Both the position numbers and the translations under genes were made by a program. A stretch of DNA of 63,853 nt, the filler included, from Octopus bimaculoides (lineage: Eukaryota), in assembly GCF_001194135.2 (NCBI RefSeq). It is 8 parts of 8 records of this genome, joined end to end, with 100 filler letters (N's around TTAATTAATTAA, not from the genome) between each part and the next. Parts side by side here need not be neighbours in the genome. Positions count along the whole stretch, not along the records: positions 8,761 to 23,909 come from NC_068981.1; 7 more parts are not named here. The stretch is one strand, 5' to 3'. This document shows positions 8,761-23,909 of this stretch, piece after piece. The notes below the pieces were generated by a model, which saw nothing but the letters and a program-made list of their open reading frames with translations, searched no databases and was not told the DNA's origin. The number at the start of each line of letters is the position of its first letter. Positions within the stretch are counted from its first letter, which is position 1.

Positions 8761-8801
<41 letters not shown>

Positions 8802-10394
8802 CTGGTCATGGCATTCAACAAGGTAGATGACGTAAAAATATATATTAGGGATTGTGGTAATGCAATATACAAGCAAACGTGTTGGTCACGACTGGAATGT
8901 CTTGTATGTACAAACCCGTGACATAATGTTTATATATATGCCCATACACATGTCCATACATGTATAAACTAGCAGAAAATGTCTTTTTCTCTTAATAAAA
9001 GCAATTAGTAAATACCGTAGATTTCTCAGTAAACTACCATAGTTTTATGTGGAAATTCTTATAGTAGATATAGTGGATTTCGATCATTCTTACTGTAGCA
9101 TGTTTAAGTTTCCTCACAGCGCATTTTAGAATATAATGTATCTCATATGAAGGATACATTGAAGATACGCTGTATCAGTGGTAAAGTAATGAGTGGAATG
9201 CCTATAGTGGTATCTCTGTTGAATTAATACTAAGTTGGTTCTAAACAACAACAAATTGTTAAGCGAAAATGTTTGGTTGTGTTCCTTGAAGCAATGCCCA
9301 GCTGATAGCATTACTTTTTTAATTGCAGTAGCAAATATATCCTTCTCTGGTAATTAAATACAGCAAATTGATATACGGAAACTGACAAAATTTACTAGGT
9401 GGAAGAGTATATCAAAATCCCTTTCTTTAGAAAGGAGTGTATAATTTTCTAAAGTAGAACTATCCCCTACTCACAGAGAGATTTTAAGGAGGTTATTGTG
9501 ACTTACAATAACATAAAACTATAGTATCCATCGATATCATAATTTTAAGTGTATGATGACAGATATCACTGACGCTTGTTACCATCAATGTTTTGTTTAT
9601 ATTTCAGTCAATATTTTCATTAAGCAATTACTATATTTAACGAATTATATACTAATAGTTAAAGAATAATATATTTGAAGGCAAACTGTGCTCAACATAG
9701 TATATAATTTTGATCAAAGACATCATTAAAAATAATTAGCATAAATTTTTCTGAATGATTGCACATAAAATTATTCACAGTAATGATTGTCAATAAAACG
9801 CAAGTCTTTTTGGCTATTTTTGGACGGTATTTGCACACTAATACAGATATCTATCTTCATTGAAACTAGTTGTAAATGCAGAAAAGTCACGTTAAGGATA
9901 CTGTAGTCGATTTTGAATGCACTGTAATTCCCTTAACAAGATGGCTTAAATTATACAGCAGACTACCTGCTATTTTGTTGTGATTCTATTGACAACCCAT
10001 TTCCAGAAAAATCAAATAAAATTACACAAAATATTTTCTATGTAGTGCTTGGATGCAGCAGAGCAATTTTTATAGGAAGTAGATAGTATTCTTTTCAATA
10101 GGCGCGTTGTGCCAATGTAGTGGAAGACAAACGCTATAATTGGACACATGTCATGATCATGTGAGGCTTCAAAATGATTATATCTTAGGGTAACATGATT
10201 GTAAAATAACAGGTAGTTTGTTTCAATAAGTAAAGTCAGGTGCTACCCAGGAATTCAAAATGCCTAAAGATCTGTTACTCTTTTTCATCGAAGTGTGGCT
10301 TGACGTAAGAAGACGGTAGAAGCTCATAGGTGAATGAGTTAATATAATGTAGAATAAGCTACTTTGTCATATAGTGTTATACGCTTTATTACAT

Positions 10395-10520
10395 GTATGT
10401 ATATATATGTGCGCATGTATGTATGCATGTATGTACGTGTGTGTGCGTGTGTGTGTGTGTGTTTGTGTTTGTGTGTGTGTATGTTTGTGCGTGTGTGTGT
10501 GTATGTTTGTGTGTGTGTAT

Positions 10521-10572
<52 letters not shown>

Positions 10573-10705
10573 GTTAACTTTTGTGATGACAGTTTCAATG
10601 CTCAACTATCAAATTGCAAGTTATAGAGATATTTTAAAAGGTTAAATATAAACTCATATATGTGTATGTATGTATGTATGTATGTATGTATGTATGTATG
10701 TATGT
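10395..10705. repeat. (GT)n and (TATG)n microsatellites
   Basis: Directly visible. Confidence 0.95.
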
Positions 10706-13700
10706 TACATGTGCGTTTGTCCTGATTGGTTGTCATGAGTTTATTTCTTGAAATCTTTGACGCCTGCTTGGTGGCAAGTTTGCAGGGCTTGTTCTTTCCG
10801 TCATTGTTCAGTCATTCACCTTTTAAATTTCAAGAAGACCTTGAACATTTTTGTACTTCACATTTCATGAGCATCTGTAGCGCATTTAGTTATGGTGCTA
10901 CGTTATTTCTTAGAACTCAATAGTCAACCATACCATGACCTAAGCAAGTTGCTACACATGCAGCTGTTCAAATGATATTTAGCATAAAGCTGTTAAGTCT
11001 ATGTTGGTTACTGTACTAGCAGACTCATGGTGTTCTTTCTAAAGACTGTTATCTCTGCTATAGAAGATGAAGATTTTTTAACTATATCTCGCTATAAGAA
11101 CTGGGCCTACGCTTATCTGTCATTTTTAGGACTGTTCTAAAAACAGTGTTAATAATTTCATAGAATTTTTATCAAACACGTTTGTCATAGCTCTGTTTAA
11201 AATTTCCCATTCAGCGAAAGTATTTGTTAAACTTAACACTTCCTCCTCGCATAGACCTCCAGTACATTTAAACTTGTTTTGGTGGGACGTATTTTATATT
11301 GAGTATTGCACATTAGCTTGTCCCTTCAGGAATTTTTACCTACGTCTAGTGCTGGTAGTTTTGATATTCTTCAGACGTTTCCTTCTTTGCATTCTTTTCA
11401 AAACCAAAACATTTGGTCACAGATTGTACAAATATCTCATATAACTGTTTGTAAAGTTCGTAATTCCATTGTATAATGCGGTAATAGTCTCGACTGGGAC
11501 GAAAGAGACTAATAATTTTAATCATGACGATTTCGTCTATTTACTACTAATGTATATTTAATTTTAAATAGTTAATGACGCTCTTTAAATGTACCGATAA
11601 ATTTTAATCGTGATTGAATTTAAAGTTATTCACAACTTGAGATTTCTTTTGTTTAAAATTATTTGGATTCTACACTTCTATCAGAGAGTATATAATTAGT
11701 TACTTTACAACATATTGAAGGTGTCTCTGAATTACTTTTTGGGGTATTTGTTCATAGATGTACGTTACAATAGATGTAATATTTAATGTTGTGTAGAAAA
11801 ATTTGTTTGCTATCTTAAACAGTAGCTAAACTTTTCCACAGTATTGTATGCTGCCTTCAGATAAACAGTAATTACATAGGTCCGAATATCGCATTGGCCA
11901 TTACGGTTACCGTGCTTAAATGCATACATGAATGAATCTCTCTCTCTATATATACAGATATATATTTACACATTTATGCGTGCAAGTATGAGAACATTAG
12001 TGCATATGAGTCATCATGTATGCGTACGTGCAATCATTTTTAGATTTGGACGTAAAATTTAGCTTGCTTTGTTCTTTCTTTTGAAAACCCTTGCATTTCT
12101 AAATAATAATGTAATTTGTTGAAGCACACCTTAGTTCACCTGTGATTTTAAGTAGAAGAAAAAAGAATATATATATAGGATACAGTATATGTATGTATGT
12201 ACGTACGTATGTATGTATGTATGTACGTACGTATGTATGTATGTACGTACGTATGTATGTATGTTTATTTTTGTGCGTTTGTATACATATAGAAATTTAT
12301 TATGTATTTATGTATCTATGAGGAAATTGTTTCAAAATGGACAGGTTATCCGGGCAAATCAATGTTACAAATAGTGAAACCAGAAAATTTTAATACGTAC
12401 TTAAAATTAAGCTGAAAACAGCATTTCTATGAGTTTATAAACAATGTAAAAGCTTTTTTTGAGTTGTTATGAATGTTTTTATCTCGCAGTAGAAAGTATA
12501 TTGCATCATAAAAGCTTATTTTCCAGCCGTAGGCTGCATAAGAGAACTGAAAAGAATTAGGATGATGGGTGATAAATAAAATCAACCGATATATAAGACG
12601 AAAGATAAGTTTTTTAAATATTTTCCAGACAGGTAGTTAACTTTCTTAACAAGAGTAAGAGAGGTACACGGTGTCAGCAGGGAACATTCATAAAATGATT
12701 CTATGTAGGTTCTAATTTCCATATAACAATAATTATTCTATTGCAAATCAGGAACCAAATTTTAAATGAAGGTGATAAAATTTTGAGATGTTTTAAATCC
12801 TTGCTGTTATCATTCTTGAGTCTAAATGTTATTATTGTTAATGTGTTCTGTTACTTGAATTAGCAAAGAGCTATGCTAATCACTATAGCATTTGTTTTAT
12901 TAAGCAAAATCGTACTCTTAGATCCCTTTGGAAATGTGCATAAAATGTTAGTGTAGTGTATGTAAAGAAAAAACTTTTTAGAGTAGAATTACTAGCTTAA
13001 TTTAGATGTTGATTTCTTGTACCTTTAGAAAAATATAAATAAATTTGGTGTCTTAGAGCTACGTTAAAAGTTGTTGTACCACCCATGATATTGTTGTTTA
13101 AACTGAGGTTGAAATTGACTGAGCAAATCTATGCTTGAAGGCGTTATGGCCATGACTACCAAGTTTTATTTTCATACGTAATATATTTAGGTCTACATTA
13201 TTCTATGTATCCTCTCCGTTTTAAGATGAATAGGTTTGGATTACCAGTTATGTTTACAAAGTCGACTACATAGAGACTGTTGCCGGCTCGTAAAACCCGT
13301 CAGTTTTCAAATGTAAATGACGCAGAATAGCACAGCTGCATTCGTTAATTAAAACAAAGCAGTAGTTTGTTTTATATCGATCGAGGTTTGTTGCAGGAAG
13401 AATGACATCTGGCATTAACAAAAAAAATTCTGCAATCTTTATTTCATTTGACCGCTGGTGGTGTATCTTAATGGTTGGTCAACAGAGTAGTAACGATGAA
13501 CAGTAAACTCAGGTATGCAATGTAGGAATCGAAATATTTCGATATGGAATCGAAATAATGTCGCAGAATCGACTAACCAGAATTTTACCTCCTCTGCGGC
13601 GTTCATACAACAGCTACAATACCGGCATTTAAGCTATTACAATGTAATTTGTCTACTTCCATCATAAAAGATATTTACTTGTTCATATAAAATTACATCG

Positions 13701-15120
13701 ATTGTAAATTGATCCCAAATATTAGGCGTGTTTCAACACAGCTATCTTTCTACTTCTATATTCATGTCTATAGACACCTCTATACGTTATTTTTGATGCA
13801 AACGAGGTAATTTGTTATTATGCGCATATTCAACTTCTGTTAGGCTGCAATTAGTCGTGTATTATTTCCCCTGTTGATGTAAGATCTCTCCAACACAGCC
13901 AAATTTTCGTCTGTCGTAATGTAATGAACGCATCTTGAAACATCATTTTCTGCAGAAGCCTCGCTGTTTTAGACTAATTTTGTTTCTTTCTTAGTTTTTG
14001 TGTAGGGATATTTTGTTTCCCAGGAGCAACACTCGATAGTAAATAAATAAAAATAATGAGCAACGATGAAATTAAATATATAAATAAAAGAAATTATAAA
14101 AAGAAATAAAATGAATGAAACAAGACAGTAAATACTTAATTTCAGAAATATATTTTTTTTACTTATTTGTTTTGAAAGCATTTAGAAATAATAAAGTTTT
14201 CATTTATTTAAAAATGTAATTGTTTATAACAGCTAGCATTTAATGTTATATTTTTTTGTTGATTGAAGTTATAATGAAAAATACTCGTGGTGTGGTCGAT
14301 CAAAACTCACATTTGTAGTAGGAAACCATATTTTAGAATTTATAGTTAAATATTCTGCTATTTGGTGTAGGAGAAATGTAATGTTCATGCATCTCCCAAC
14401 GTAACGTACAGGAAATGGAATTGCTTCAAGGATCAAAATTGCATCAAGGTCTTAGTATACTGGAAACATAATTCTGGTTCTATGTTGCCCACTGCAAAAC
14501 TAAAAGATAACTAGAACTTGAATCCTACAATAATAAAGGCAGACAACTGGTTGATTTTTCGTGATAAGAGTTATAATAAACGGAAGGTAAATCCGATCTA
14601 TATTTTCTAAATTCCAGCGCCTTTTTTCCGAGAGTTAGTAGAAATAAAAGGAGGTAGTGGAATTATAAATTTCTCATTCTAAGACCACACTTAAAACAAG
14701 TGTTCAGGCAATGTAAAGGAACTGATATCTGAAGTATTAAGTAAGATTATGTCATACCGATTCCGTCAAACAAGCACGTAGGCCCCCATATCTTGTAATA
14801 AGGTTATCAATAAGTTGACTTGGTTTCAAATAGAAATTGAAACCACTTAGTTGGACGCTTACTTCTTCCTCCCTCTTTTCCCTCTATTATTTAATCCAGT
14901 GCATAATTCTTCAATTATCACATGCGATTGCTTTGAATTTCCGCCTCTAAGATCTCCAAAATAAGAATAATATTGATTTTATCGATTATAATTTTTAACC
15001 CACAAAAATAAAACAAGAAGAAATCTTTAAATCATTACATCAACTTAATTAATGAAGATCTAGAATAACTTTTCTCGACGGCCACAGTCTTGCTATTTGT
15101 TTATTGCCACAGTCTTGCTA

Positions 15121-15230
15121 TTTTCATAAGGTCCGATTGTTGTTGTTGTTGTTGCTGCCTTTGTTTATCCTCAGTCCAGTCTTAAATGAAAATTCCTATG
15201 ATCGAAGGAGTTCTTTGCCCTGACTATTAC
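15121..15230 (+). repeat. Left arm of a perfect 110-bp inverted repeat
   Basis: Base-by-base reverse complement of 17464-17573, including the (GTT)5 tract. Confidence 0.95.
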
Positions 15231-16141
15231 TCTTCGGGGTCAAGCATGTCTCATGATGTAATTTTCTCACCAAAATATTCATTTCTCTTTGCTTGAAACA
15301 AAGCCAGGTTTTGCTACAGAAGCGTAATAGTTACTGATTGACACTAGTATACATTTGAGCTCTATTTTGTCAACAGTGGTCCATCAAAAAGCTTTACTGA
15401 ATAGTTTTTGGAAATATTAACATATGTATATGCACTAAATTCCAAACAGAAACGAAGGGAGAAAATGAAAACAAAGGACATTCAGTTTTCACTTAATGGC
15501 ATTAGCAGCATAAAGCTACCGAACCTGAGTCACTGATTAAACTTTTCTTTAGTAAAACTCTTCTTCATTTGAGACATGGATAAATAAAACTGAAATCTCG
15601 AACTGATCAAATATTTGATTATATAACCATTATATAGCTGCGTCCAGAAATACGTGCATTATAGCAGTACTACCTCGTTTTAGTTTAACACTTTTTAAAT
15701 AAAACATCTAGATACGGATCTTCAACTAAATTAGATGTCTGGTGAAATATCATATGGCCAACTCGGTGAGAAACTCCTTCTTACTAGTTCCGCTTATCAA
15801 AATATCTCCACATGATAGCTGACAGACCATGCACTTTGCTGCATTTCACTGACCCCTCACTGTGATTTACTGTACCTTGCTACTGCGTGATAATTAAGAA
15901 TCGAGCAGTTTCTTTAGAATCTAAATCGAAATCATCATTTCGACCTTTACTATCATCACCGAACTTTGCTATTATTATTTGTCTCTGTTGGAGACTCGTT
16001 GTTTTTAAAACCAACCAGTGTTCATGATATCACTTCGTCAATTGGATTTCTTTTTCTTCAGTTTTCAGAAATAATTAAAATATAAGATAAACTTGATTTT
16101 AATCCAACGTACACACGAACACTTCCATATGTGCTCGAAGA

Positions 16142-16195
<54 letters not shown>

Positions 16196-17463
16196 CGCAC
16201 GCACGCACGCACATAAGTGAACACACACAAATACACACACTCGCGAGCGCTTTAAAATACACATATGCGCACAAATATTTATTAATATCTTTTCAATATA
16301 TACCTTTATGTTATCACATTGCAGAGAAGTCAATACTTAATGGAGAACGTATTATACACACGCACGCACACACACATATACACGTCTGTGTGTAGATTTG
16401 TGTGTGTAGATTTTTGTGTGTGTGTGTGTGTGTGTGTGTCGTTCCGAGAACTCTATAAGATATGGCATAAGCACTCAGCACTGAGTGTAATGATTCTTAC
16501 AGAAGAAACAGCTGTGAGCTAATGAAGGTAAATCCTGTTCTTTTGTCAGTCGTACATCGATATTACATCTGTATTCTTCTGGTGCTTTACTCTGAAGCAT
16601 CTGGAAAATATTTTCTGCATTATAAGGTACATATCAAAACAAAAGACTGTAAATTTTTTGCTATTATCTATTCACTATTACACTTGTTTCATAATGCTAA
16701 TACGAGTTGTAAAAGCGTACATGTAGGAGAAACATTTATGTCTCCTACACGTACAATTTTTCAACTGCTATTAATAACTGGTGAATGCGTGAGCGCGTGT
16801 GATAGATGTTACGTTTAAGCCTCACTATTCTCTTCCTTACGCATCATAAATGGTCCTGTATACACGAAGTCCGTATCGTTGTTCGTATAATCTAAGAATC
16901 GGGGTACTAAGTTTATTATACAAACAAACACACGACTACAGGTTATAACGAAAGGAAATTTAGATTAGAGGATTTCCATTTCTTTACCATAGGTTTTGCA
17001 GGTTTATATTATAATGGCTAAGTAAAATATAAATATCAGAATCAAGATGGGGATTTAATTCGCAGAAAATTTACCTGTCCATCTGTTACAATAGTTGCGT
17101 TTCCAAAAAGGATGACGTTCTTGTCAAACTGACGTATAAACTAGTTCTATTTCTTTTGAACTGGTTTTATAGCTATTCTTTATGCATCGTTTTCAACAGA
17201 ACTAGTACTAAATAACACTAAACAAACTCTCTTGTATGAAAGATTGTATCTTGAAAGTTGTTACTTATGCCGGCTTTAGCTGACATTTGCCCTGTATGTA
17301 AAATCAGTCAACTCGCGCCTTTCATAAGAGATTTCTCCTCGACACGCTACAATTCTTTCTTAACGAACAAGCCAACGAGGGAGCCTGTGCGTGGTCATTT
17401 CAATCTCCCCCTAAAATTTAGAAACAAATTGTCCTCAAATAGCCCTCTACTTCTAAAAAGGAC

Positions 17464-17573
17464 GTAATAGTCAGGGCAAAGAACTCCTTCGATCATAGGA
17501 ATTTTCATTTAAGACTGGACTGAGGATAAACAAAGGCAGCAACAACAACAACAACAATCGGACCTTATGAAAA
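17464..17573 (-). repeat. Right arm of a perfect 110-bp inverted repeat
   Basis: Base-by-base reverse complement of 15121-15230. Confidence 0.95.
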
Positions 17574-18487
17574 ACACTAGGAATCCTACTCACTTACCAA
17601 TGTAACAGCATAAGAAATTAATGATGTATCATTTATAGCTCTTACAAAACAAATAGTTGGTATTTTTCTCTTCATTATACATACACACATGCATACATAC
17701 ATATACATACAACATACATACATACATACATACATACATACATACATACATACATAATATATACATACATTCATGCATACATACATATAATTTACTACAC
17801 ACACGGTGACGTCAAAGCGTTCATCCTATTACTTTGAATGTACCGAAAGCACTCTTTCACAATTGAAATAAAATTTATCACCTTCTTGATGGAAAGAAAA
17901 AAAAGAATAAAGAAAACGGATTAAATTTATTTGATATCCGGTTTTTGTTTTGGGATATTGTTATTGTTGCTGATATGATGATGGTGTGTGTTTTCGTTTT
18001 TTTAACGTAGTTAATAACTACCTATCTACCTGTTTTGTACGTTTGTGTACATACATAGATACATACATACATAGGTACATACATACATATATACATACAT
18101 ATTTATACGTGTATATATATATATATATACACACTTACACAGCTATGTATATATATGCATATATATATATATATATATATATATANNNNNNNNNNNNNNN
18201 NNNNNNNNNNNNNNNNNNNNNNNNNNNNNNNNNNNNNNNNNNNNNNNNNNNNNNNNNNNNNNNNNNNNNNNNNNNNNNNNNNNNNNNNNNNNNNNNNNNN
18301 NNNNNNNNNNNNNNNNNNNNNNNNNNNNNNNNNNNNNNNNNNNNNNNNNNNNNNNNNNNNNNNNNNNNNNNNNNNNNNNNNNNNNNNNNNNNNNNNNNNN
18401 NNNNNNNNNNNNNNNNNNNNNNNNNNNNNNNNNNNNNNNNNNNNNNNNNNNNNNNNNNNNNNNNNNNNNNNNNNNNNNNNNNATGTA

Positions 18488-18520
<33 letters not shown>

Positions 18521-19127
18521 GTGTATATATAAACATACAGACACACTACATTCGCACATAATGTTTACCACTCCTTTTAAATTAATTCTTATCATTCTCC
18601 ATTAATGATAATAACTAACCCGGTGGCTCCGACTGAGACTGTAATGATGTCAGTGGTGAAGAAACATGGTTAAGGTTTGTGGTTTGTGATGGGAGCTGAA
18701 GTGTTGATTGAATTAATTAATTCATCGTTTGCTTTGCTTCACTAGATATACTTATTAGTTTCTCGGTCAAATACCGAATTATACTTTAAGATTTACAGTT
18801 ACACTATTCTAAGTCATTCTATTTCCGTACGAAGTGTAATTAACTTGCCAATTTCGAATATTTCAAGTAATTTTTTACTGTTAAATGCCTCCAGTCGTTC
18901 TAATTCACGTGCGTGTCTATTCGCTGGAGTTCTTAGTAGTTACTTAAAAAATGTTTAAGTACAAATAAATTGTATATAATAACGTGTAAACCATTTCACC
19001 CAAAACAGCGCACTATTAACAAGGGAATATTTGAAAAGATCATCCTATCCCGCAATGTGTTTTATTGTTAGTAGAACTCAACAGGTGGGCTCAGGACTAC
19101 ATAATTTGCTGTAAGCATGCGGCTGAA

Positions 19128-19132
19128 TAATA

Positions 19133-19203
<71 letters not shown>

Positions 19204-19244
19204 GATGACGAAGGTGATGATGATGATGGTGGTGATTATGACAG

Positions 19245-19279
<35 letters not shown>

Positions 19280-19285
19280 GTGATG
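19128..19285. repeat. (AAT)n/(GAT)n microsatellite
   Basis: Directly visible. Confidence 0.95.
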
Positions 19286-20435
19286 GAAATAAATAACTGA
19301 ATAAACAAAGTTTTAGCTGTTTTCGATTTATTTCAGCATCAAGTGGATTTAAGAAGACTTACCTTTACTTCAATAGGTACTCAGCGGGATACATTACTGT
19401 AATCGAACGTAGAGAGAATTTCACTCATGAAATACCTGTTAAGGATTCTTGAATGAAGTCACCTTTTGAATAAGTACAAATAATAATAAAAGAAAGCAAC
19501 AACAAAAAGAAAATGAATATAAAGAAAACATATAACGTAACAGCTTCAGCAGTAGCAAAAGTAATAAACAATAACACCAAAAAGGAAAATGAAATAAAGA
19601 CAAGAAAAGAAAAAAGAAACTATTGCTATTTATTTCTTTATATATTTATTAATGTATTTGTAATGCACTCTTTTACTTCGATGAAGATAACACAGAACGT
19701 AACACCGTTTGTCCTGTGGCCCTCAGATCTAAAACATGAATTCAGTAGAAGTCTCTTTAATGTTTATTTTCGCTAATAATTTACCCTGTAATGATATTCA
19801 GAAAGTACAGTGGTAACTGGTATGAAAATATTCAGTTAAAAATACGAATGTCAATAAGGGTATAAACATTAGCTACAAGAAAGTGTCACTGACCGAGGTT
19901 AAAAACAATGATATTTTATTGAATATATATGTAATACGTATATATTATATTAATATAGAATGAAACGACAAACCGTGTGAAGTTTCATTTCTTAAAATAC
20001 GTGAATGTACAATTATCGAAAGCTATAATGAAAATAAATGTAAATCTTGCGTTTATAAGAAAGTTTTATTAAAATGTTTCCTAAATAGATAGTAAAATAA
20101 TAGTAGTAAACATCTGAATACATTTGATCTTTGAAACAGAATGCAATAAAACGTTACCCCGATGATTCATTGCAGTTAAGCATCCGAATGCATTCGAAAC
20201 ATTCAATGCTGAGTTCCAAATAATAGCATTGGGGAAACGTGCGTAGGAACTAAATATTTGTACTGGTTTTTTATCGTAATTTCCACGACTTATGATCTGT
20301 ATATCAATAACCAGTAACATTGCCCAGTACAGTGGTCAACTAACCACTACAATGGAAGCCGACTGAATAATCATAGTCTACGTGAAGCTTTAGCTCAGAC
20401 AGTTGTTGTTATACATCAAACTGTTGACACAAGAA

Positions 20436-20525
<90 letters not shown>

Positions 20526-21573
20526 NNNNNNNNNNNNNNNNNNNNNNNNNNNNNNNNNNNNNNNNNNNNNNNNNNNNNNNNNNNNNNNNNNNNNNNNNNN
20601 NNNNNNNNNNNNNNNNNNNNNNNNNNNNNNNNNNNNNNNNNNNNNNNNNNNNNNNNNNNNNNNNNNNNNNNNNNNNNNNNNNNNNNNNNNNNNNNNNNNN
20701 NNNNNNNNNNNNNNNNNNNNNNNNNNNNNNNNNNNNNNNNNNNNNNNNNNNNNNNNNNNNNNNNNNNNNNNNNNNNNNNNNNNNNNNNNNNNNNNNNNNN
20801 NNNNNNNNNNNNNNNNNNNNNNNNNNNNNNNNNNNNNNNNNNNNNNNNNNNNNNNNNNNNNNNNNNNNNNNNNNNNNNNNNNNNNNNNNNNNNNNNNNNN
20901 NNNNNNNNNNNNNNNNNNNNNNNNNNNNNNNNNNNNNNNNNNNNNNNNNNNNNNNNNNNNNNTATATATATAACAAGTAAAAGAAGAAAACTTCGTGGAT
21001 ATTCATATTGTAATATGGAACGCTTGATAGTACTGAAGCTATACTTCCTTATTATACATTGTGTTTGCCAGTATTCACACAGATTGACAAATCCAAACAT
21101 ACAAAAATACATACATATGCATGTGTGTATTTTTCTAATACATTACATCAGACATGATGATGACTAAGGCATATATCTTGTTAATTGTTGGAATTAGTTT
21201 CAAATAAAAAGACAAACCAAATGAAATTTAAATTCTTAAAACACAGTGAATATTCAATTATAGCACCCCCCCCCCAAAAAAAAACAGGCACCCGGAGCAG
21301 ACGATTTTCGTCTGTCAACGATATAAATATGAGTACTTTTATGCGCCTTGAGTCCATGGTAAACAAGATCTTCTGAAGGTAAATAACACAGTATTCTGTG
21401 TTCTAACACAACATTCACGTTAGGTTGGATATAAAGATTGCCTTTTCTTATTCATACTGCTTCGGTGGCTATTACATATATATTTAGATTGACGTTGCAA
21501 TACTAAACATATATATGCATACATACAAATGGATTGATGTTGCTATACTAAACATATATATTGATTTCGAATT

Positions 21574-21787
21574 GATTTCAAATTTTGGTATTAGGCCAGC
21601 AATTTGGGGGGAAAAGTCAAGTCGATTACATTGGTCCAAGTGCTTAACAGGTACTTATTTTATTGACTCTGAAATGTTCAAAGGCAAAGTCGACGTCGGT
21701 GCAATTTGAACTCAGAATGTAAAGACGGACGAAATGCTGCCTAGCATTTTGTCCGGCATGCGAAAGAATCTGCTAGCTCACAGTCTT
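21574..21787 (-). mobile_element. SINE family A
   Basis: GGTACTTATTTTATTGAC...AAAGGCAAAGTCGAC...TTTGAACTCAGAA...GACGGACGAAATG matches the reverse complement of 62220-62637. Confidence 0.85.
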
Positions 21788-21987
21788 ATAGTGAACATAT
21801 ATCTTAAAATAATATAGAAGCTATAATATACCTGAAATACAATGTAAGGGGAAAACACATGTACATACACACCACACATTAATAGAGAGAGAGGGAGAGA
21901 AAGAGGGAGAGAAATAAATGGATAGATAGACAGTCGTACAGAAATATAGATAAATATGATAGACATAAACAGTCACATAGACGGACG

Positions 21988-22059
<72 letters not shown>

Positions 22060-22099
22060 CATAGACTGATATATAGACAGGTTATTGAGTTGGAACTGC

Positions 22100-22245
22100 G
22101 AACTGTCAAGTATTTCCTAGTACATAATGTATATGTATATATATATATATATACATTATACGCACACACAAACACACTCATATATACATATATATATTCA
22201 CACATATACAAGTACATATATCCATATGCATGCATACACACACAC
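22100..22245 (+). repeat. Segment duplicated in split form at 22849-22912 and 23486-23592 (empty version of an insertion site)
   Basis: Near-exact identity of both flanks, including the same (TA)9 count. Confidence 0.9.
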
Positions 22246-22912
22246 NNNNNNNNNNNNNNNNNNNNNNNNNNNNNNNNNNNNNNNNNNNNNNNNNNNNNNN
22301 NNNNNNNNNNNNNNNNNNNNNNNNNNNNNNNNNNNNNNNNNNNNNNNNNNNNNNNNNNNNNNNNNNNNNNNNNNNNNNNNNNNNNNNNNNNNNNNNNNNN
22401 NNNNNNNNNNNNNNNNNNNNNNNNNNNNNNNNNNNNNNNNNNNNNNNNNNNNNNNNNNNNNNNNNNNNNNNNNNNNNNNNNNNNNNNNNNNNNNNNNNNN
22501 NNNNNNNNNNNNNNNNNNNNNNNNNNNNNNNNNNNNNNNNNNNNNNNNNNNNNNNNNNNNNNNNNNNNNNNNNNNNNNNNNNNNNNNNNNNNNNNNNNNN
22601 NNNNNNNNNNNNNNNNNNNNNNNNNNNNNNNNNNNNNNNNNNNNNNNNNNNNNNNNNNNNNNNNNNNNNNNNNNNNNNNNNNNNNNNNNNNNNNNNNNNN
22701 NNNNNNNNNNNNNNNNNNNNNNNNNNNNNNNNNNNNNNNNNNNNNNNNNNNNNNNNNNNNNNNNNNNNNNNNNNNNNNNNNNNNNNNNNNNNNNNNNNNN
22801 NNNNNNNNNNNNNNNNNNNNNNNNNNNNNNNNNNNNNNNNNNNNNNNNGAACTGTCAAGTATTTCCTAGTACATAATGTATATGTATATATATATATATA
22901 TACGTATACGCA

Positions 22913-23433
22913 GTTATATTTATATGTGAGCCCCGCGTCTGAAAGGTCTAGAGACAAATACTTTCCTCTCTGGTCAATCTCTCATCAACTTCTTCAAGTA
23001 TCACTTGAAGAGGAACGTGACAGTAGAGAGGGAAGTTTTGTCTAGTGAATGTTTCAAAAAAAGATGGGTGAATGTAGCAAGGATGGCACGTGTGAATGAC
23101 GGAGCCAGCTTGGGCATAATCTTATGAACCAAAAAGAAGAAAAGAAAAATGAGAATCCCTTACTGTAATGTGTTTTTTTTTACATGACATTATTGCCCAA
23201 GGTTACGTGGACTTTTCCGTAGGCTCTCCTTTCGACGGACAAACTTAATCTGTTTTCCCTCTTTACACTGACATTTCTGTAATACACGATCCCTATTGGT
23301 CGCTTGTTTTTTCTTTTCCACGATCCCTTTTGATCGAAATTCGACCCGCTTTTTTTTTCTCTTCTTCTTCCGAAAAAGAAAAACTCTACTTTGTATTTTG
23401 TTCCCTCTGTGTTCAGCCGTGTGTGGCCAATAA

Positions 23434-23475
<42 letters not shown>
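22913..23475 (+). mobile_element. 5'-truncated Tx1/L1-like LINE: ORF2 C-terminus, 3' UTR, AATAAA and (TCTA)n tail
   Basis: 22936-23127 translates to RLKGLETNTFLSGQSLINFFKYHLKRNVTVEREVLSSECFKKRWVNVARMARVNDGASLGIIL*, resembling Tx1-clade ORF2 ends (recalled similarity). Ends CCAATAAA(TCTA)n and is flanked by an imperfect duplication ending in TATACGCA. Confidence 0.65.
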
Positions 23476-23699
23476 NNNNNNNNNNATATATATATATATA
23501 CATTATACGCACACACAAACACACTCATATATACATATATATATTCACACATATACAAGTACATATATCCATATGCATGCATACACACACACATATATAT
23601 GCATGTATATTCATATACATATGTGTGTGAGTGTGTGTGTGTATCTGTGTGTGTGTATCTGTGTGTGTGTCTGTGTGTGTGTTTGTGTTTGTGTACTCA

Positions 23700-23860
23700 T
23701 AAGTAGATATGTTCATGTATATTTTCTGACGAAGAGCTTTGCTCGAAACGTAAAAATTACCTTCCTTTCCTTCCCTGAGCGTCTGCTAATACTTCGCATG
23801 TACCACGTTCTCGCGTTGTTGTTTTTCTCTCGTGTTTGTTCTTCGTTTTTCTTTTAGATT
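23700..23860 (+). mobile_element. Penelope-like terminal repeat remnant ending at (TA)n
   Basis: Contains the hammerhead motif; downstream sequence (CCTGAGCG...CTAATAC...TTGTT) resembles 28520-28640 and 63700-63842. Confidence 0.55.
23717..23760 (+). ncRNA. Minimal type I hammerhead ribozyme motif (Penelope type)
   Basis: CTGACGA 23726-32; extra A; helix II GAGC-TTT-GCTC; GAA-ACGT-A with a palindromic ACGT; helix I GTA(T)ATTTT/AAAATTAC. Confidence 0.65.
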
Positions 23861-23863
23861 TAT

Positions 23864-23909
<46 letters not shown>

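What the first reader, a model, noticed from the sequence alone, without database searches (positions are those of the whole stretch)
15121..17573. Perfect 110-bp inverted duplication bracketing 2.2 kb
Seen: 15121-15230 and 17464-17573 are exact reverse complements, including a mutation-prone (GTT)5 tract, with no Ns at the junctions. The arm resembles an old dispersed repeat (a very diverged relative sits at ~13090-13160), so perfect identity cannot be ordinary repeat homology. Known: staggered-break inversions leave inverted duplications at both breakpoints. Inference: a very recent inversion, gene conversion, or a young element with 110-bp TIRs. If transcribed, it forms a 110-bp perfect dsRNA, a potential ADAR/Dicer substrate in a lineage known for heavy A-to-I editing. 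Caveat: 110 bp is close to short-read length, so a mis-join is plausible.
Basis: partly seen in the sequence, partly recalled or inferred. Interest (0 to 1): 0.7.

Follow-up and report, generated by a model that had tools for sequence, protein, structure and literature searches.

The report
Recent 110-bp inverted local duplication scar
A 110-base stretch of non-coding, repeat-rich DNA was recently copied in reverse orientation 2.2 kb upstream of its source; this is most likely an ordinary DNA-repair scar, not a mobile element or a functional unit.

Summary
15121-15230 and 17464-17573 are exact reverse complements (110 nt), similarity stops sharply at all four ends, and no N lies nearby. In the 2.34-Gb assembly the arm occurs only at these two places, and the 2.2-kb interior is single-copy.

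Most of the arm (about positions 17-110) belongs to an old dispersed repeat family (over 1,100 motif hits against 15 control hits) and is about 70% identical to the family consensus. Its outer 16 nt are unique flank.

A family profile follows the right copy about 92 nt beyond the arm into the interior (47 bits against 36.5±1.5 in controls). It stops dead at the inner end of the left arm. So the right copy is the source, and the left arm is a truncated inverted copy of repeat tail plus flank.

This excludes transposon terminal repeats (also no target-site duplication and no other copies). It also excludes two independent repeat insertions and gene conversion.

An 18-nt local tandem duplication overlaps the left outer junction by 3 nt (TTT), which hints at template-switch repair. 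I favour an inverted templated insertion. A staggered-break micro-inversion and an assembly artefact remain open, because no reads or outgroup were available.

Transcription, dsRNA formation and RNA editing were not tested. Interest is low.

The parts
17464..17573 (-). Right arm, inferred SOURCE copy. It consists of 94 nt of the 3' part of an old interspersed-repeat copy, including its (CAA)6/(TTG)6 tail, plus 16 nt of unique flanking DNA (TCGGACCTTATGAAAA on the + strand).
   Evidence: Exact reverse complement of 15121-15230. The family profile runs through its inner end into the interior. A BLAST match to another family member also extends 16 nt beyond the arm here (query 199-308) but not at the left arm.
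17372..17560 (-). Old, roughly 30%-diverged copy of a dispersed repeat family of about 230 bp, with an internal deletion of about 52 columns. The right arm is its tail end.
   Evidence: nhmmer with a 27-locus family profile: 47.3 bits, E=3e-15, hmm 61-294. Controls with shuffled or unrelated sequence placed after the arm give 36.3±1.3 bits (1 of 300 reach the real score) and 36.8±1.5 bits (0 of 240).
15121..15230 (+). Left arm, inferred DERIVED copy. It is an inverted duplicate truncated in the middle of the family (profile position 151), with no family sequence beyond it. The first 3 nt (TTT) are shared with the adjacent tandem unit, so the minimal copied tract is 15124-15230 (107 nt).
   Evidence: nhmmer hit 15115-15227, 36.2 bits, ending at hmm 151. 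The sequence after the arm scores at null level against the family consensus.
15081..15123 (+). Local tandem duplication. GCCACAGTCTTGCTATTT occurs at 15081-15098 and again at 15106-15123; the second copy overlaps the left arm by 3 nt. This is a possible templated-insertion/microhomology footprint at junction J1.
   Evidence: Comparable non-microsatellite local repeats occur about once per 4.3 kb (40 in 171 kb), so coincidence with one of the four junctions has p of about 0.01-0.03.
15231..17463 (.). 2233-bp interior: single-copy non-coding DNA holding (CA)n/(TG)n microsatellites and an older dispersed repeat at about 16443-16790. It has no gene content.
   Evidence: Genome search: only the self match is full-length, and the other hits are confined to 16145-16242 and 16443-16790. 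No convincing ORFs, no Pfam hits and no Rfam hits.
13069..13274 (+).
   Evidence: nhmmer 57.9 bits, E=2e-18, hmm 59-276.

Best explanation
This is a genuine, evolutionarily recent, neutral structural scar. About 107-110 bp at 17464-17573 was copied in reverse orientation into a site 2.2 kb upstream (15121/15124-15230). The copied tract is the tail of an old interspersed-repeat copy plus 16 bp of its unique flank.

The copying happened during repair of a DNA break or a stalled replication fork, through template switching (an inverted templated insertion of the MMBIR/FoSTeS or polymerase-theta end-joining type). The same event also left an 18-nt local tandem duplication and a 3-nt microhomology at the outer junction.

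Shown: the exact inverted pair; its uniqueness in the genome; that the right copy is the source and the left a truncated copy; the absence of transposon hallmarks. Inferred: that the copying was DNA-templated and local, and that it was an insertion rather than an inversion.

Predicted but not shown: the two arms could mediate flipping of the 2.2-kb interior by homologous recombination. If the locus is transcribed, they would form a 110-bp perfect RNA duplex.
For: The IR is exact and sharply bounded. There are only two exact copies in 2.34 Gb, and arm plus interior is not repeated.

Arm positions of about 17-110 belong to an old family: the motif is found 1140 times against 15 in the control, with an alignment and consensus. 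The arm is about 70% identical to that consensus while the arms are 100% identical to each other.

The family profile continues 92 nt past the inner end of the right arm (47.2 bits against 36.3±1.3 and 36.8±1.5 in 540 controls, one of which reaches it). It stops at the inner end of the left arm. Junction 17463|17464 is therefore ancestral and the left copy is derived.

The arm carries 16 nt that lie outside the family, so a piece of a locus was copied, not a repeat unit.

The 18-nt tandem duplication overlaps the left outer junction by TTT. Its background rate gives p of about 0.01-0.03 for coincidence. This argues that J1 is a repair junction, which fits insertion (J1 and J2 new, J3 and J4 old) and not the only inversion topology compatible with J3 being old.

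The signature of an inverted insertion near its template with junction microhomology is described for MMBIR templated insertions (PMC8421209).
Against: No reads, second individual or outgroup could be examined, so neither the pre-event allele nor the physical reality of the junctions is shown. The J1 footprint is circumstantial and T-rich. No microhomology is evident at the inner junction J2. The template lies 2.2 kb away, further than the roughly 100 bp typical of yeast MMBIR insertions. On its own, the sequence beyond the right arm gives no family hit, so the polarity argument rests on in-register continuity (p of about 0.003). The assembly is a gapped short-read draft with demonstrable redundancy 5 kb away (D16).
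Confidence: 0.45

Rival explanations
1. A 2.3-kb micro-inversion made by two breaks, one of them staggered by 110 nt. Fill-in of the overhang leaves the 110 bp at both ends in opposite orientation (the staggered-break model of Ranz et al. 2007). The ancestral order would be A-flank, arm, reverse complement of the interior, D-flank.
For: The anatomy fits: an inverted duplication of a locally unique tract at the two ends of a segment. The size lies within the published range of 46 bp to 1.9 kb, and one-sided duplication was seen in 12 of 18 Drosophila cases (PMC1885836). The topology that keeps the right inner junction ancestral is allowed.
Against: That topology requires the left outer junction (15120|15121) to be an untouched ancestral adjacency. 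Yet an 18-nt tandem duplication with 3-nt overlap sits exactly there. The mirror topology is excluded because it makes 17463|17464 a new junction. No second duplicated tract exists at the other breakpoint. The published cases are large chromosomal inversions, not 2-kb ones.
Confidence: 0.25
2. An assembly artefact of a short-read, gap-closed, Hi-C-scaffolded draft. In this reading, one arm (most likely the left, whose junctions have no independent support) was wrongly placed or filled in, and the genome has a single copy.
For: 110 nt is near short-read length. The same piece has N gaps and a 107-nt perfect direct duplication abutting two gaps (22139-22245 and 23486-23592), plus a 97% duplicate at 22100-22164 and 22849-22912. 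These show local mis-scaffolding or redundancy. No independent data were accessible.
Against: There are no Ns at or near the arms. Both left junctions are clean joins to unique sequence, which in a read-based assembler needs reads that carry them. If the A-flank and interior were truly adjacent, they would have assembled directly. The arm boundaries fall in unique sequence, not at microsatellites as in the gap-edge duplicate. No other 100% pair of 40 nt or more was found in about 155 kb of other loci. No alternative contig lacking the arm exists. This part rests on my general knowledge of de Bruijn assemblers, not on a test.
Confidence: 0.2
3. An RNA-mediated, 5'-truncated retrocopy of the right-hand repeat with read-through into 16 nt of flank, inserted at a break without endonuclease hallmarks.
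For: The left arm comprises the 3' tail side of the element plus downstream flank ending in GAAAA, and it is truncated on the 5' side. That is the shape of a 5'-truncated retrocopy with 3' transduction.
Against: Landing 2.2 kb from its source in a 2.3-Gb genome is about a 10^-6 coincidence. There is no target-site duplication and no untemplated poly(A) or repeat tail after the transduced 16 nt. No other near-identical family members exist genome-wide, so the family is not active.
Confidence: 0.04
4. A young DNA transposon or foldback element with 110-bp terminal inverted repeats; or two old inverted family copies homogenised by gene conversion.
For: A perfect inverted pair bracketing 2.2 kb. 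The arm is related to a dispersed family.
Against: No target-site duplication of any length. Arm plus interior is single-copy. There is no transposase-like ORF or Pfam hit. The arms are a chimera of old repeat tail plus unique flank, and only the right one continues into the rest of the repeat. The left site has no diverged family sequence flanking the arm to act as a conversion recipient.
Confidence: 0.03

Closest known systems
Microhomology-mediated templated insertions (MMBIR/FoSTeS 'MMB-TI'; related polymerase-theta templated insertions)
   Same: An insertion in inverted orientation relative to a nearby template on the same chromosome. The junction is complex, with a second short locally templated (tandem) piece and 3-nt microhomology. 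No transposon hallmarks are present.
   Different: The template is 2.2 kb away rather than within about 100 bp. The insert (107-110 nt) is at the long end. Microhomology is seen at one junction only. The pre-insertion allele is unknown.
Inverted duplications at inversion breakpoints from staggered breaks (Ranz et al. 2007, Drosophila melanogaster group)
   Same: An inverted duplicate of a locally unique tract at both ends of a segment. Its size lies within the 46 bp-1.9 kb range, and one-sided duplication is common.
   Different: The segment is only 2.2 kb and the inverted state is not demonstrated. The junction that should be untouched carries a repair-like tandem duplication. The Drosophila duplicates average 88% identity, while these are 100% identical.
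Inverted repeat pairs (such as inverted Alu pairs) as dsRNA/ADAR hyper-editing substrates
   Same: Two inverted copies a few kb apart would form a long perfect duplex if co-transcribed (-201 kcal/mol).
   Different: Here the pair is a one-off local duplication, not two insertions of an abundant family. Transcription and editing are untested.

Membership tests
Class II transposon / MITE / foldback element with terminal inverted repeats | Target-site duplication directly flanking the two terminal repeats | tested here: not met
   The left flank ends ...CTTGCTA and the right flank starts ACACTAGG.... No direct repeat of any length is present and no palindromic terminal bases could hide one.
Class II transposon / MITE / foldback element with terminal inverted repeats | Other copies of the element (arms plus interior, or the arms alone as termini) elsewhere in the genome | tested here: not met
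   The exact arm occurs only at the two window sites. The interior is full-length only at itself. The search gives lower-bound counts.
Class II transposon / MITE / foldback element with terminal inverted repeats | Termini are element-specific sequence; autonomous members encode a transposase | tested here: not met
   The arms consist of the tail of an old retroposon-like repeat plus 16 nt of unique flank. No ORF has a Pfam hit.
Staggered-break inversion with breakpoint inverted duplication | Inverted duplicate of ancestrally single-copy sequence at the two ends of the rearranged segment, tens of bp to about 2 kb long | tested here: met
   published size range.
Staggered-break inversion with breakpoint inverted duplication | One copy keeps its ancestral outer junction and the other its ancestral inner junction | tested here: inconclusive
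   The right inner junction is ancestral by repeat continuity (p of about 0.003). The left outer junction carries an 18-nt tandem duplication with 3-nt overlap, suggesting it is a repair junction. This is not proof.
Staggered-break inversion with breakpoint inverted duplication | Outgroup or alternative allele shows the segment in the opposite orientation | not testable with these tools
   No related eukaryotic genome or reads were available.
MMBIR/FoSTeS-type inverted templated insertion | Inserted tract is the reverse complement of a nearby template in cis | tested here: met
   The left arm is the reverse complement of 17464-17573, 2233 nt away. Its polarity (right copy as source) comes.
MMBIR/FoSTeS-type inverted templated insertion | Microhomology at the switch junctions, often with additional short templated pieces | tested here: inconclusive
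   J1 shows a 3-nt TTT overlap plus an 18-nt locally templated repeat. At J2 nothing is evident, because the ancestral acceptor sequence is unknown.
MMBIR/FoSTeS-type inverted templated insertion | Existence of a pre-insertion allele in which the A-flank abuts the interior | not testable with these tools
   No alternative contig exists in the assembly. No population data were available.
SINE / non-LTR retroposon (for the old repeat that supplies the arm) | Many dispersed diverged copies with a simple-repeat 3' tail | tested here: met
   The motif occurs 1140 times against 15 in the control. The consensus of about 230 bp ends in a (GTT/ATT)n run, which is an (AAC/AAT)n tail on the element strand.
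SINE / non-LTR retroposon (for the old repeat that supplies the arm) | Pol III-type (tRNA/5S/7SL-derived) head, and target-site duplications | tested here: not met
   ARAGORN finds nothing on the consensus. There is no Rfam hit in the piece, which holds a full copy. No target-site duplication is recognisable for the right copy. The class of the family therefore stays unresolved.

The most novel reading that the evidence does not exclude
The duplication is real and has created a new functional structure. One possibility is a recombination-competent 'flip-flop' segment, whose 2.2-kb interior is polymorphic in orientation between individuals or cells through exchange between the perfect 110-bp arms. 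The other is a newborn long-hairpin RNA locus (110-bp perfect stem) that feeds ADAR hyper-editing or small-RNA pathways in a lineage with very heavy A-to-I editing. Either would give a dated example of how a template-switch scar gives birth to a dsRNA source.
Probability: 0.06. Interest if true: 0.45.

Novelty: new member of a known kind. Interest (0 to 1): 0.2.

Why it matters
If real, this is a clean, datable example of a small inverted templated duplication in a cephalopod-sized, repeat-rich genome. Its polarity can be read from the old repeat it was copied out of. Such scars are the raw material for later inversions and for long dsRNA.

It matters mainly as a quality check of this draft assembly and as one data point on repair signatures. 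There is no sign of a gene, regulatory RNA or mobile element, so its biological weight is small.

Tried and rejected
1. Transposon with terminal inverted repeats. Rejected: no target-site duplication, single copy, chimeric arms, no ORF or Pfam hit.

2. Two independent insertions of a young repeat. Rejected: the family is about 30% diverged, there are no other near-identical copies, and the arm includes 16 nt of non-family flank.

3. Gene conversion between old inverted copies. Rejected: no family sequence flanks the left arm.

4. Looking for the old repeat's own target-site duplication, to decide whether the A-flank or the D-flank is the ancestral neighbour. Nothing rose above the shuffle level.

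5. Junction-spanning ORFs looked up in public assemblies, to get independent read-level support.

6. Sampling 200 kb or more of the genome for the frequency of such perfect inverted pairs. The fallback on 171 kb already held found no other 100% pair, which is too small a sample to exclude a systematic artefact.

7. Base-skew comparison of interior against flanks, to detect an inversion. The flanks themselves are inconsistent and dominated by microsatellites.

8. Short 7-9-nt matches between the A-flank and the arm or right interior (TTTGTTTAT, GCTATTTG, CAGTCTT). They are T-rich and too likely by chance to count as template-switch footprints.

9. The similar lengths of the 107-nt gap-edge duplicate and the 107-nt minimal copied tract. 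The gap-edge duplicate is bounded by microsatellites, so I take the match in length as coincidental.

10. The original genome paper for assembly parameters is not held.

Full report
**1. The observation**

Positions 15121-15230 are the exact reverse complement of 17464-17573 (110 nt, 100%), with 2233 nt between them. Extending the comparison 40 nt outward or inward gives only scattered matches, so all four boundaries are sharp.

The arm contains (TTG)6. No N lies between 15121 and 17573; the nearest gap is 18186-18482. With the base composition of the piece, the chance expectation for such a pair is about 10^-52.

The window lies at C1:56,457,489-56,481,453 of a 2.34-Gb assembly with 145,327 contigs and a largest scaffold of about 200 Mb.

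**2. Copy number**

A whole-assembly search with the arm returns only the two window copies, plus one 78%-identical partial match 2.4 Mb away. The 2233-bp interior matches full-length only itself. Its other hits are confined to a (CA)n tract (16145-16242) and an older dispersed repeat (about 16443-16790). Searches with both junction regions find no alternative contig that lacks an arm or carries the interior differently. The searches give lower bounds for abundant repeats, but a second near-identical copy would have been seen.

**3. What the arm is made of**

The motif CTATGATCGAAGGNNTTC from the arm occurs 1140 times in the genome with at most one mismatch. Its reversed control occurs 15 times. 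Many variants show CG-to-CA decay. The arm therefore derives from an old, abundant dispersed family.

Aligning 30 loci gives a consensus of about 230 bp. It starts with a (GTT/ATT)n run, which is an (AAC/AAT)n tail on the opposite strand, and continues well beyond the point where the arm ends. The arm is only about 70% identical to this consensus. Its outer 16 nt (TTTTCATAAGGTCCGA) lie outside the family.

No tRNA-like head, Rfam family or target-site duplication was found. I therefore call it an old retroposon-like repeat of unresolved class. A profile built from 27 loci (window copies excluded) also finds an independent full-length member at 13069-13274 (E=2e-18).

**4. Which copy is the source**

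This is the most informative result.

- At the right arm, the family profile aligns from 17560 down to 17372. It runs through the inner end of the arm and 92 nt further into the interior, with a 52-column internal deletion (47.3 bits).
- At the left arm, the hit (15115-15227, 36.2 bits) stops at profile position 151, exactly the inner end of the arm.

For the control, I kept the arm and replaced the 200 nt after it.

| Sequence placed after the arm | Score (bits) | Reaching the real 47.2 bits |
|---|---|---|
| 300 shuffles of the real right-inner sequence | 36.3±1.3 | 1 of 300 |
| 240 other genomic 200-mers from the piece | 36.8±1.5 (max 42.4) | 0 of 240 |

A BLAST match to another family member likewise extends 16 nt past the arm on the right but not on the left.

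One caveat applies. Searched on its own, the right-inner segment gives no profile hit, so the support comes from in-register continuity (p of about 0.003).

Conclusion: the junction 17463|17464 is an old, authentic adjacency. The right copy is part of an ancient repeat insertion. The left arm is a truncated inverted copy of that repeat's tail plus 16 nt of the flank specific to that locus.

**5. What this excludes**

- *Transposon with 110-bp terminal repeats.* It would need target-site duplications (none), other copies (none) and element-specific termini. The arms are instead a chimera of old repeat and flank. The interior has no ORF with a Pfam hit.
- *Two independent insertions of a repeat.* They cannot share 16 nt of unique flank, nor be identical when the family is about 30% diverged.
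- *Gene conversion.* It needs a diverged homologous recipient, and the sequence flanking the left arm shows none.
- *An RNA-mediated, 5'-truncated retrocopy.* It has the right shape, but it would have had to land 2.2 kb from its source in 2.3 Gb, and it lacks both a target-site duplication and an untemplated tail.

**6. Insertion or inversion**

Two DNA-level mechanisms leave this anatomy.

(a) An inverted templated insertion. A broken end or stalled nascent strand switches to the opposite strand 2.2 kb away, copies about 107-110 nt and returns. Here J1 and J2 (the left-arm junctions) are new, and J3 and J4 are old.

(b) A 2.3-kb inversion with one break staggered by 110 nt (Ranz et al. 2007, PMC1885836). 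In that work the breakpoint duplications were 46 bp to 1.9 kb long, and 12 of 18 inversions had a duplication from only one breakpoint.

The sequence at J1 is therefore informative. GCCACAGTCTTGCTATTT occurs at 15081-15098 and again at 15106-15123, and the second copy overlaps the arm by TTT. Non-microsatellite local repeats of this kind occur about once per 4.3 kb (40 in 171 kb). An edge of one coinciding with one of four junctions has p of about 0.01-0.03.

A short locally templated piece plus microhomology next to an inverted templated tract is the described signature of MMBIR-type insertions (PMC8421209). I therefore favour (a) but only moderately. The footprint is T-rich, nothing comparable is visible at J2, and the template is further away than in the yeast cases.

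**7. Assembly artefact**

This cannot be settled here. 

In favour of an artefact:
- The assembly is a gapped short-read draft.
- 5 kb away, a 107-nt perfect direct duplicate abuts two gaps (22139-22245 and 23486-23592), with a further 97% duplicate at 22100-22164 and 22849-22912.

Against an artefact:
- No gaps lie near the arms, and both left junctions are clean joins to unique sequence.
- The arm boundaries do not sit at microsatellites, unlike the gap-edge duplicate.
- No other 100% pair of 40 nt or more was found in about 155 kb of other loci.
- From general knowledge of read-based assemblers, if the A-flank and interior were truly adjacent they would have assembled directly, without any reason to interpose 110 nt.

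I give the artefact about 0.2.

**8. Age and consequences**

Zero differences in 110 sites bounds the pairwise divergence of the arms below 2.7% (95%), against about 30% divergence of the arm from its family consensus. The event is therefore recent relative to the repeat, though not necessarily very recent in absolute terms.

The piece shows no coding potential, no Pfam hit and no Rfam family. The arms would form a duplex of about -201 kcal/mol if co-transcribed, and they could mediate flipping of the interior by homologous exchange. Both are predictions only. Nothing here shows transcription, editing or orientation polymorphism.

**9. Verdict**

The feature is most likely a neutral repair scar of a known kind, whose source and derived copies can be told apart. 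It is not a mobile element and not a functional module. Interest is low (0.2). The main open point, real versus mis-assembled, needs reads or PCR.

Noticed in passing
window 22139-22245 and 23486-23592; also 22100-22164 and 22849-22912: A 107-nt perfect direct duplicate whose copies abut the N runs 22246-22848 and 23476-23485, plus a 97% duplicate at the start of the small contig between them. It looks like overlapping contig ends with a haplotype or tandem variant scaffolded in between, which would be local assembly redundancy.
   Followed up: partly
window ~16443-16790 (core 16601-16773; hairpin TGTAGGAGA...TCTCCTACA at ~16722-16749): An old dispersed repeat inside the interior, with dozens of 74-84% matches across all chromosomes. 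The matches often fall on both strands within a few hundred bp of each other at the same locus (for example C14:26624678/26624928 and C8:85363357/85363585). This suggests a family that sits as inverted pairs or has inverted termini (MITE-like).
   Followed up: no
L007 1-182 vs 568-747 (G000:C21:36268158-36268904): A 182-nt inverted repeat at 98.9% identity with a spacer of about 385 nt, at a locus fetched for the interior repeat family. It is a near-perfect inverted pair of a different kind, probably element termini.
   Followed up: no
genome-wide motif list: In the old repeat family, the commonest single-mismatch variant of CTATGATCGAAGG is CTATGATCAAAGG (CG to CA). Positions 14-15 are mostly CA, CG or TG. 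The family appears to show marked CpG decay.
   Followed up: no
window 8761-23909 generally (e.g. 10450-10575, 16145-16210, 17700-17760, 19130-19200, 21985-22060): An unusually dense set of microsatellites: (GT)n, (CA)n, (CATA)n, (AAT)n, (GAT)n, (GATA)n and (AT)n. All three large N gaps are flanked by (AT)n or (AAT)n runs, so contig breaks track simple repeats.
   Followed up: no
window 8858-8902 and 9170-9254: Weak additional fragments of the same old repeat family (nhmmer E=0.008 and 0.018). With the full copy at 13069-13274 and the copy at 17372-17560, this makes at least three to four family remnants in 15 kb.
   Followed up: no
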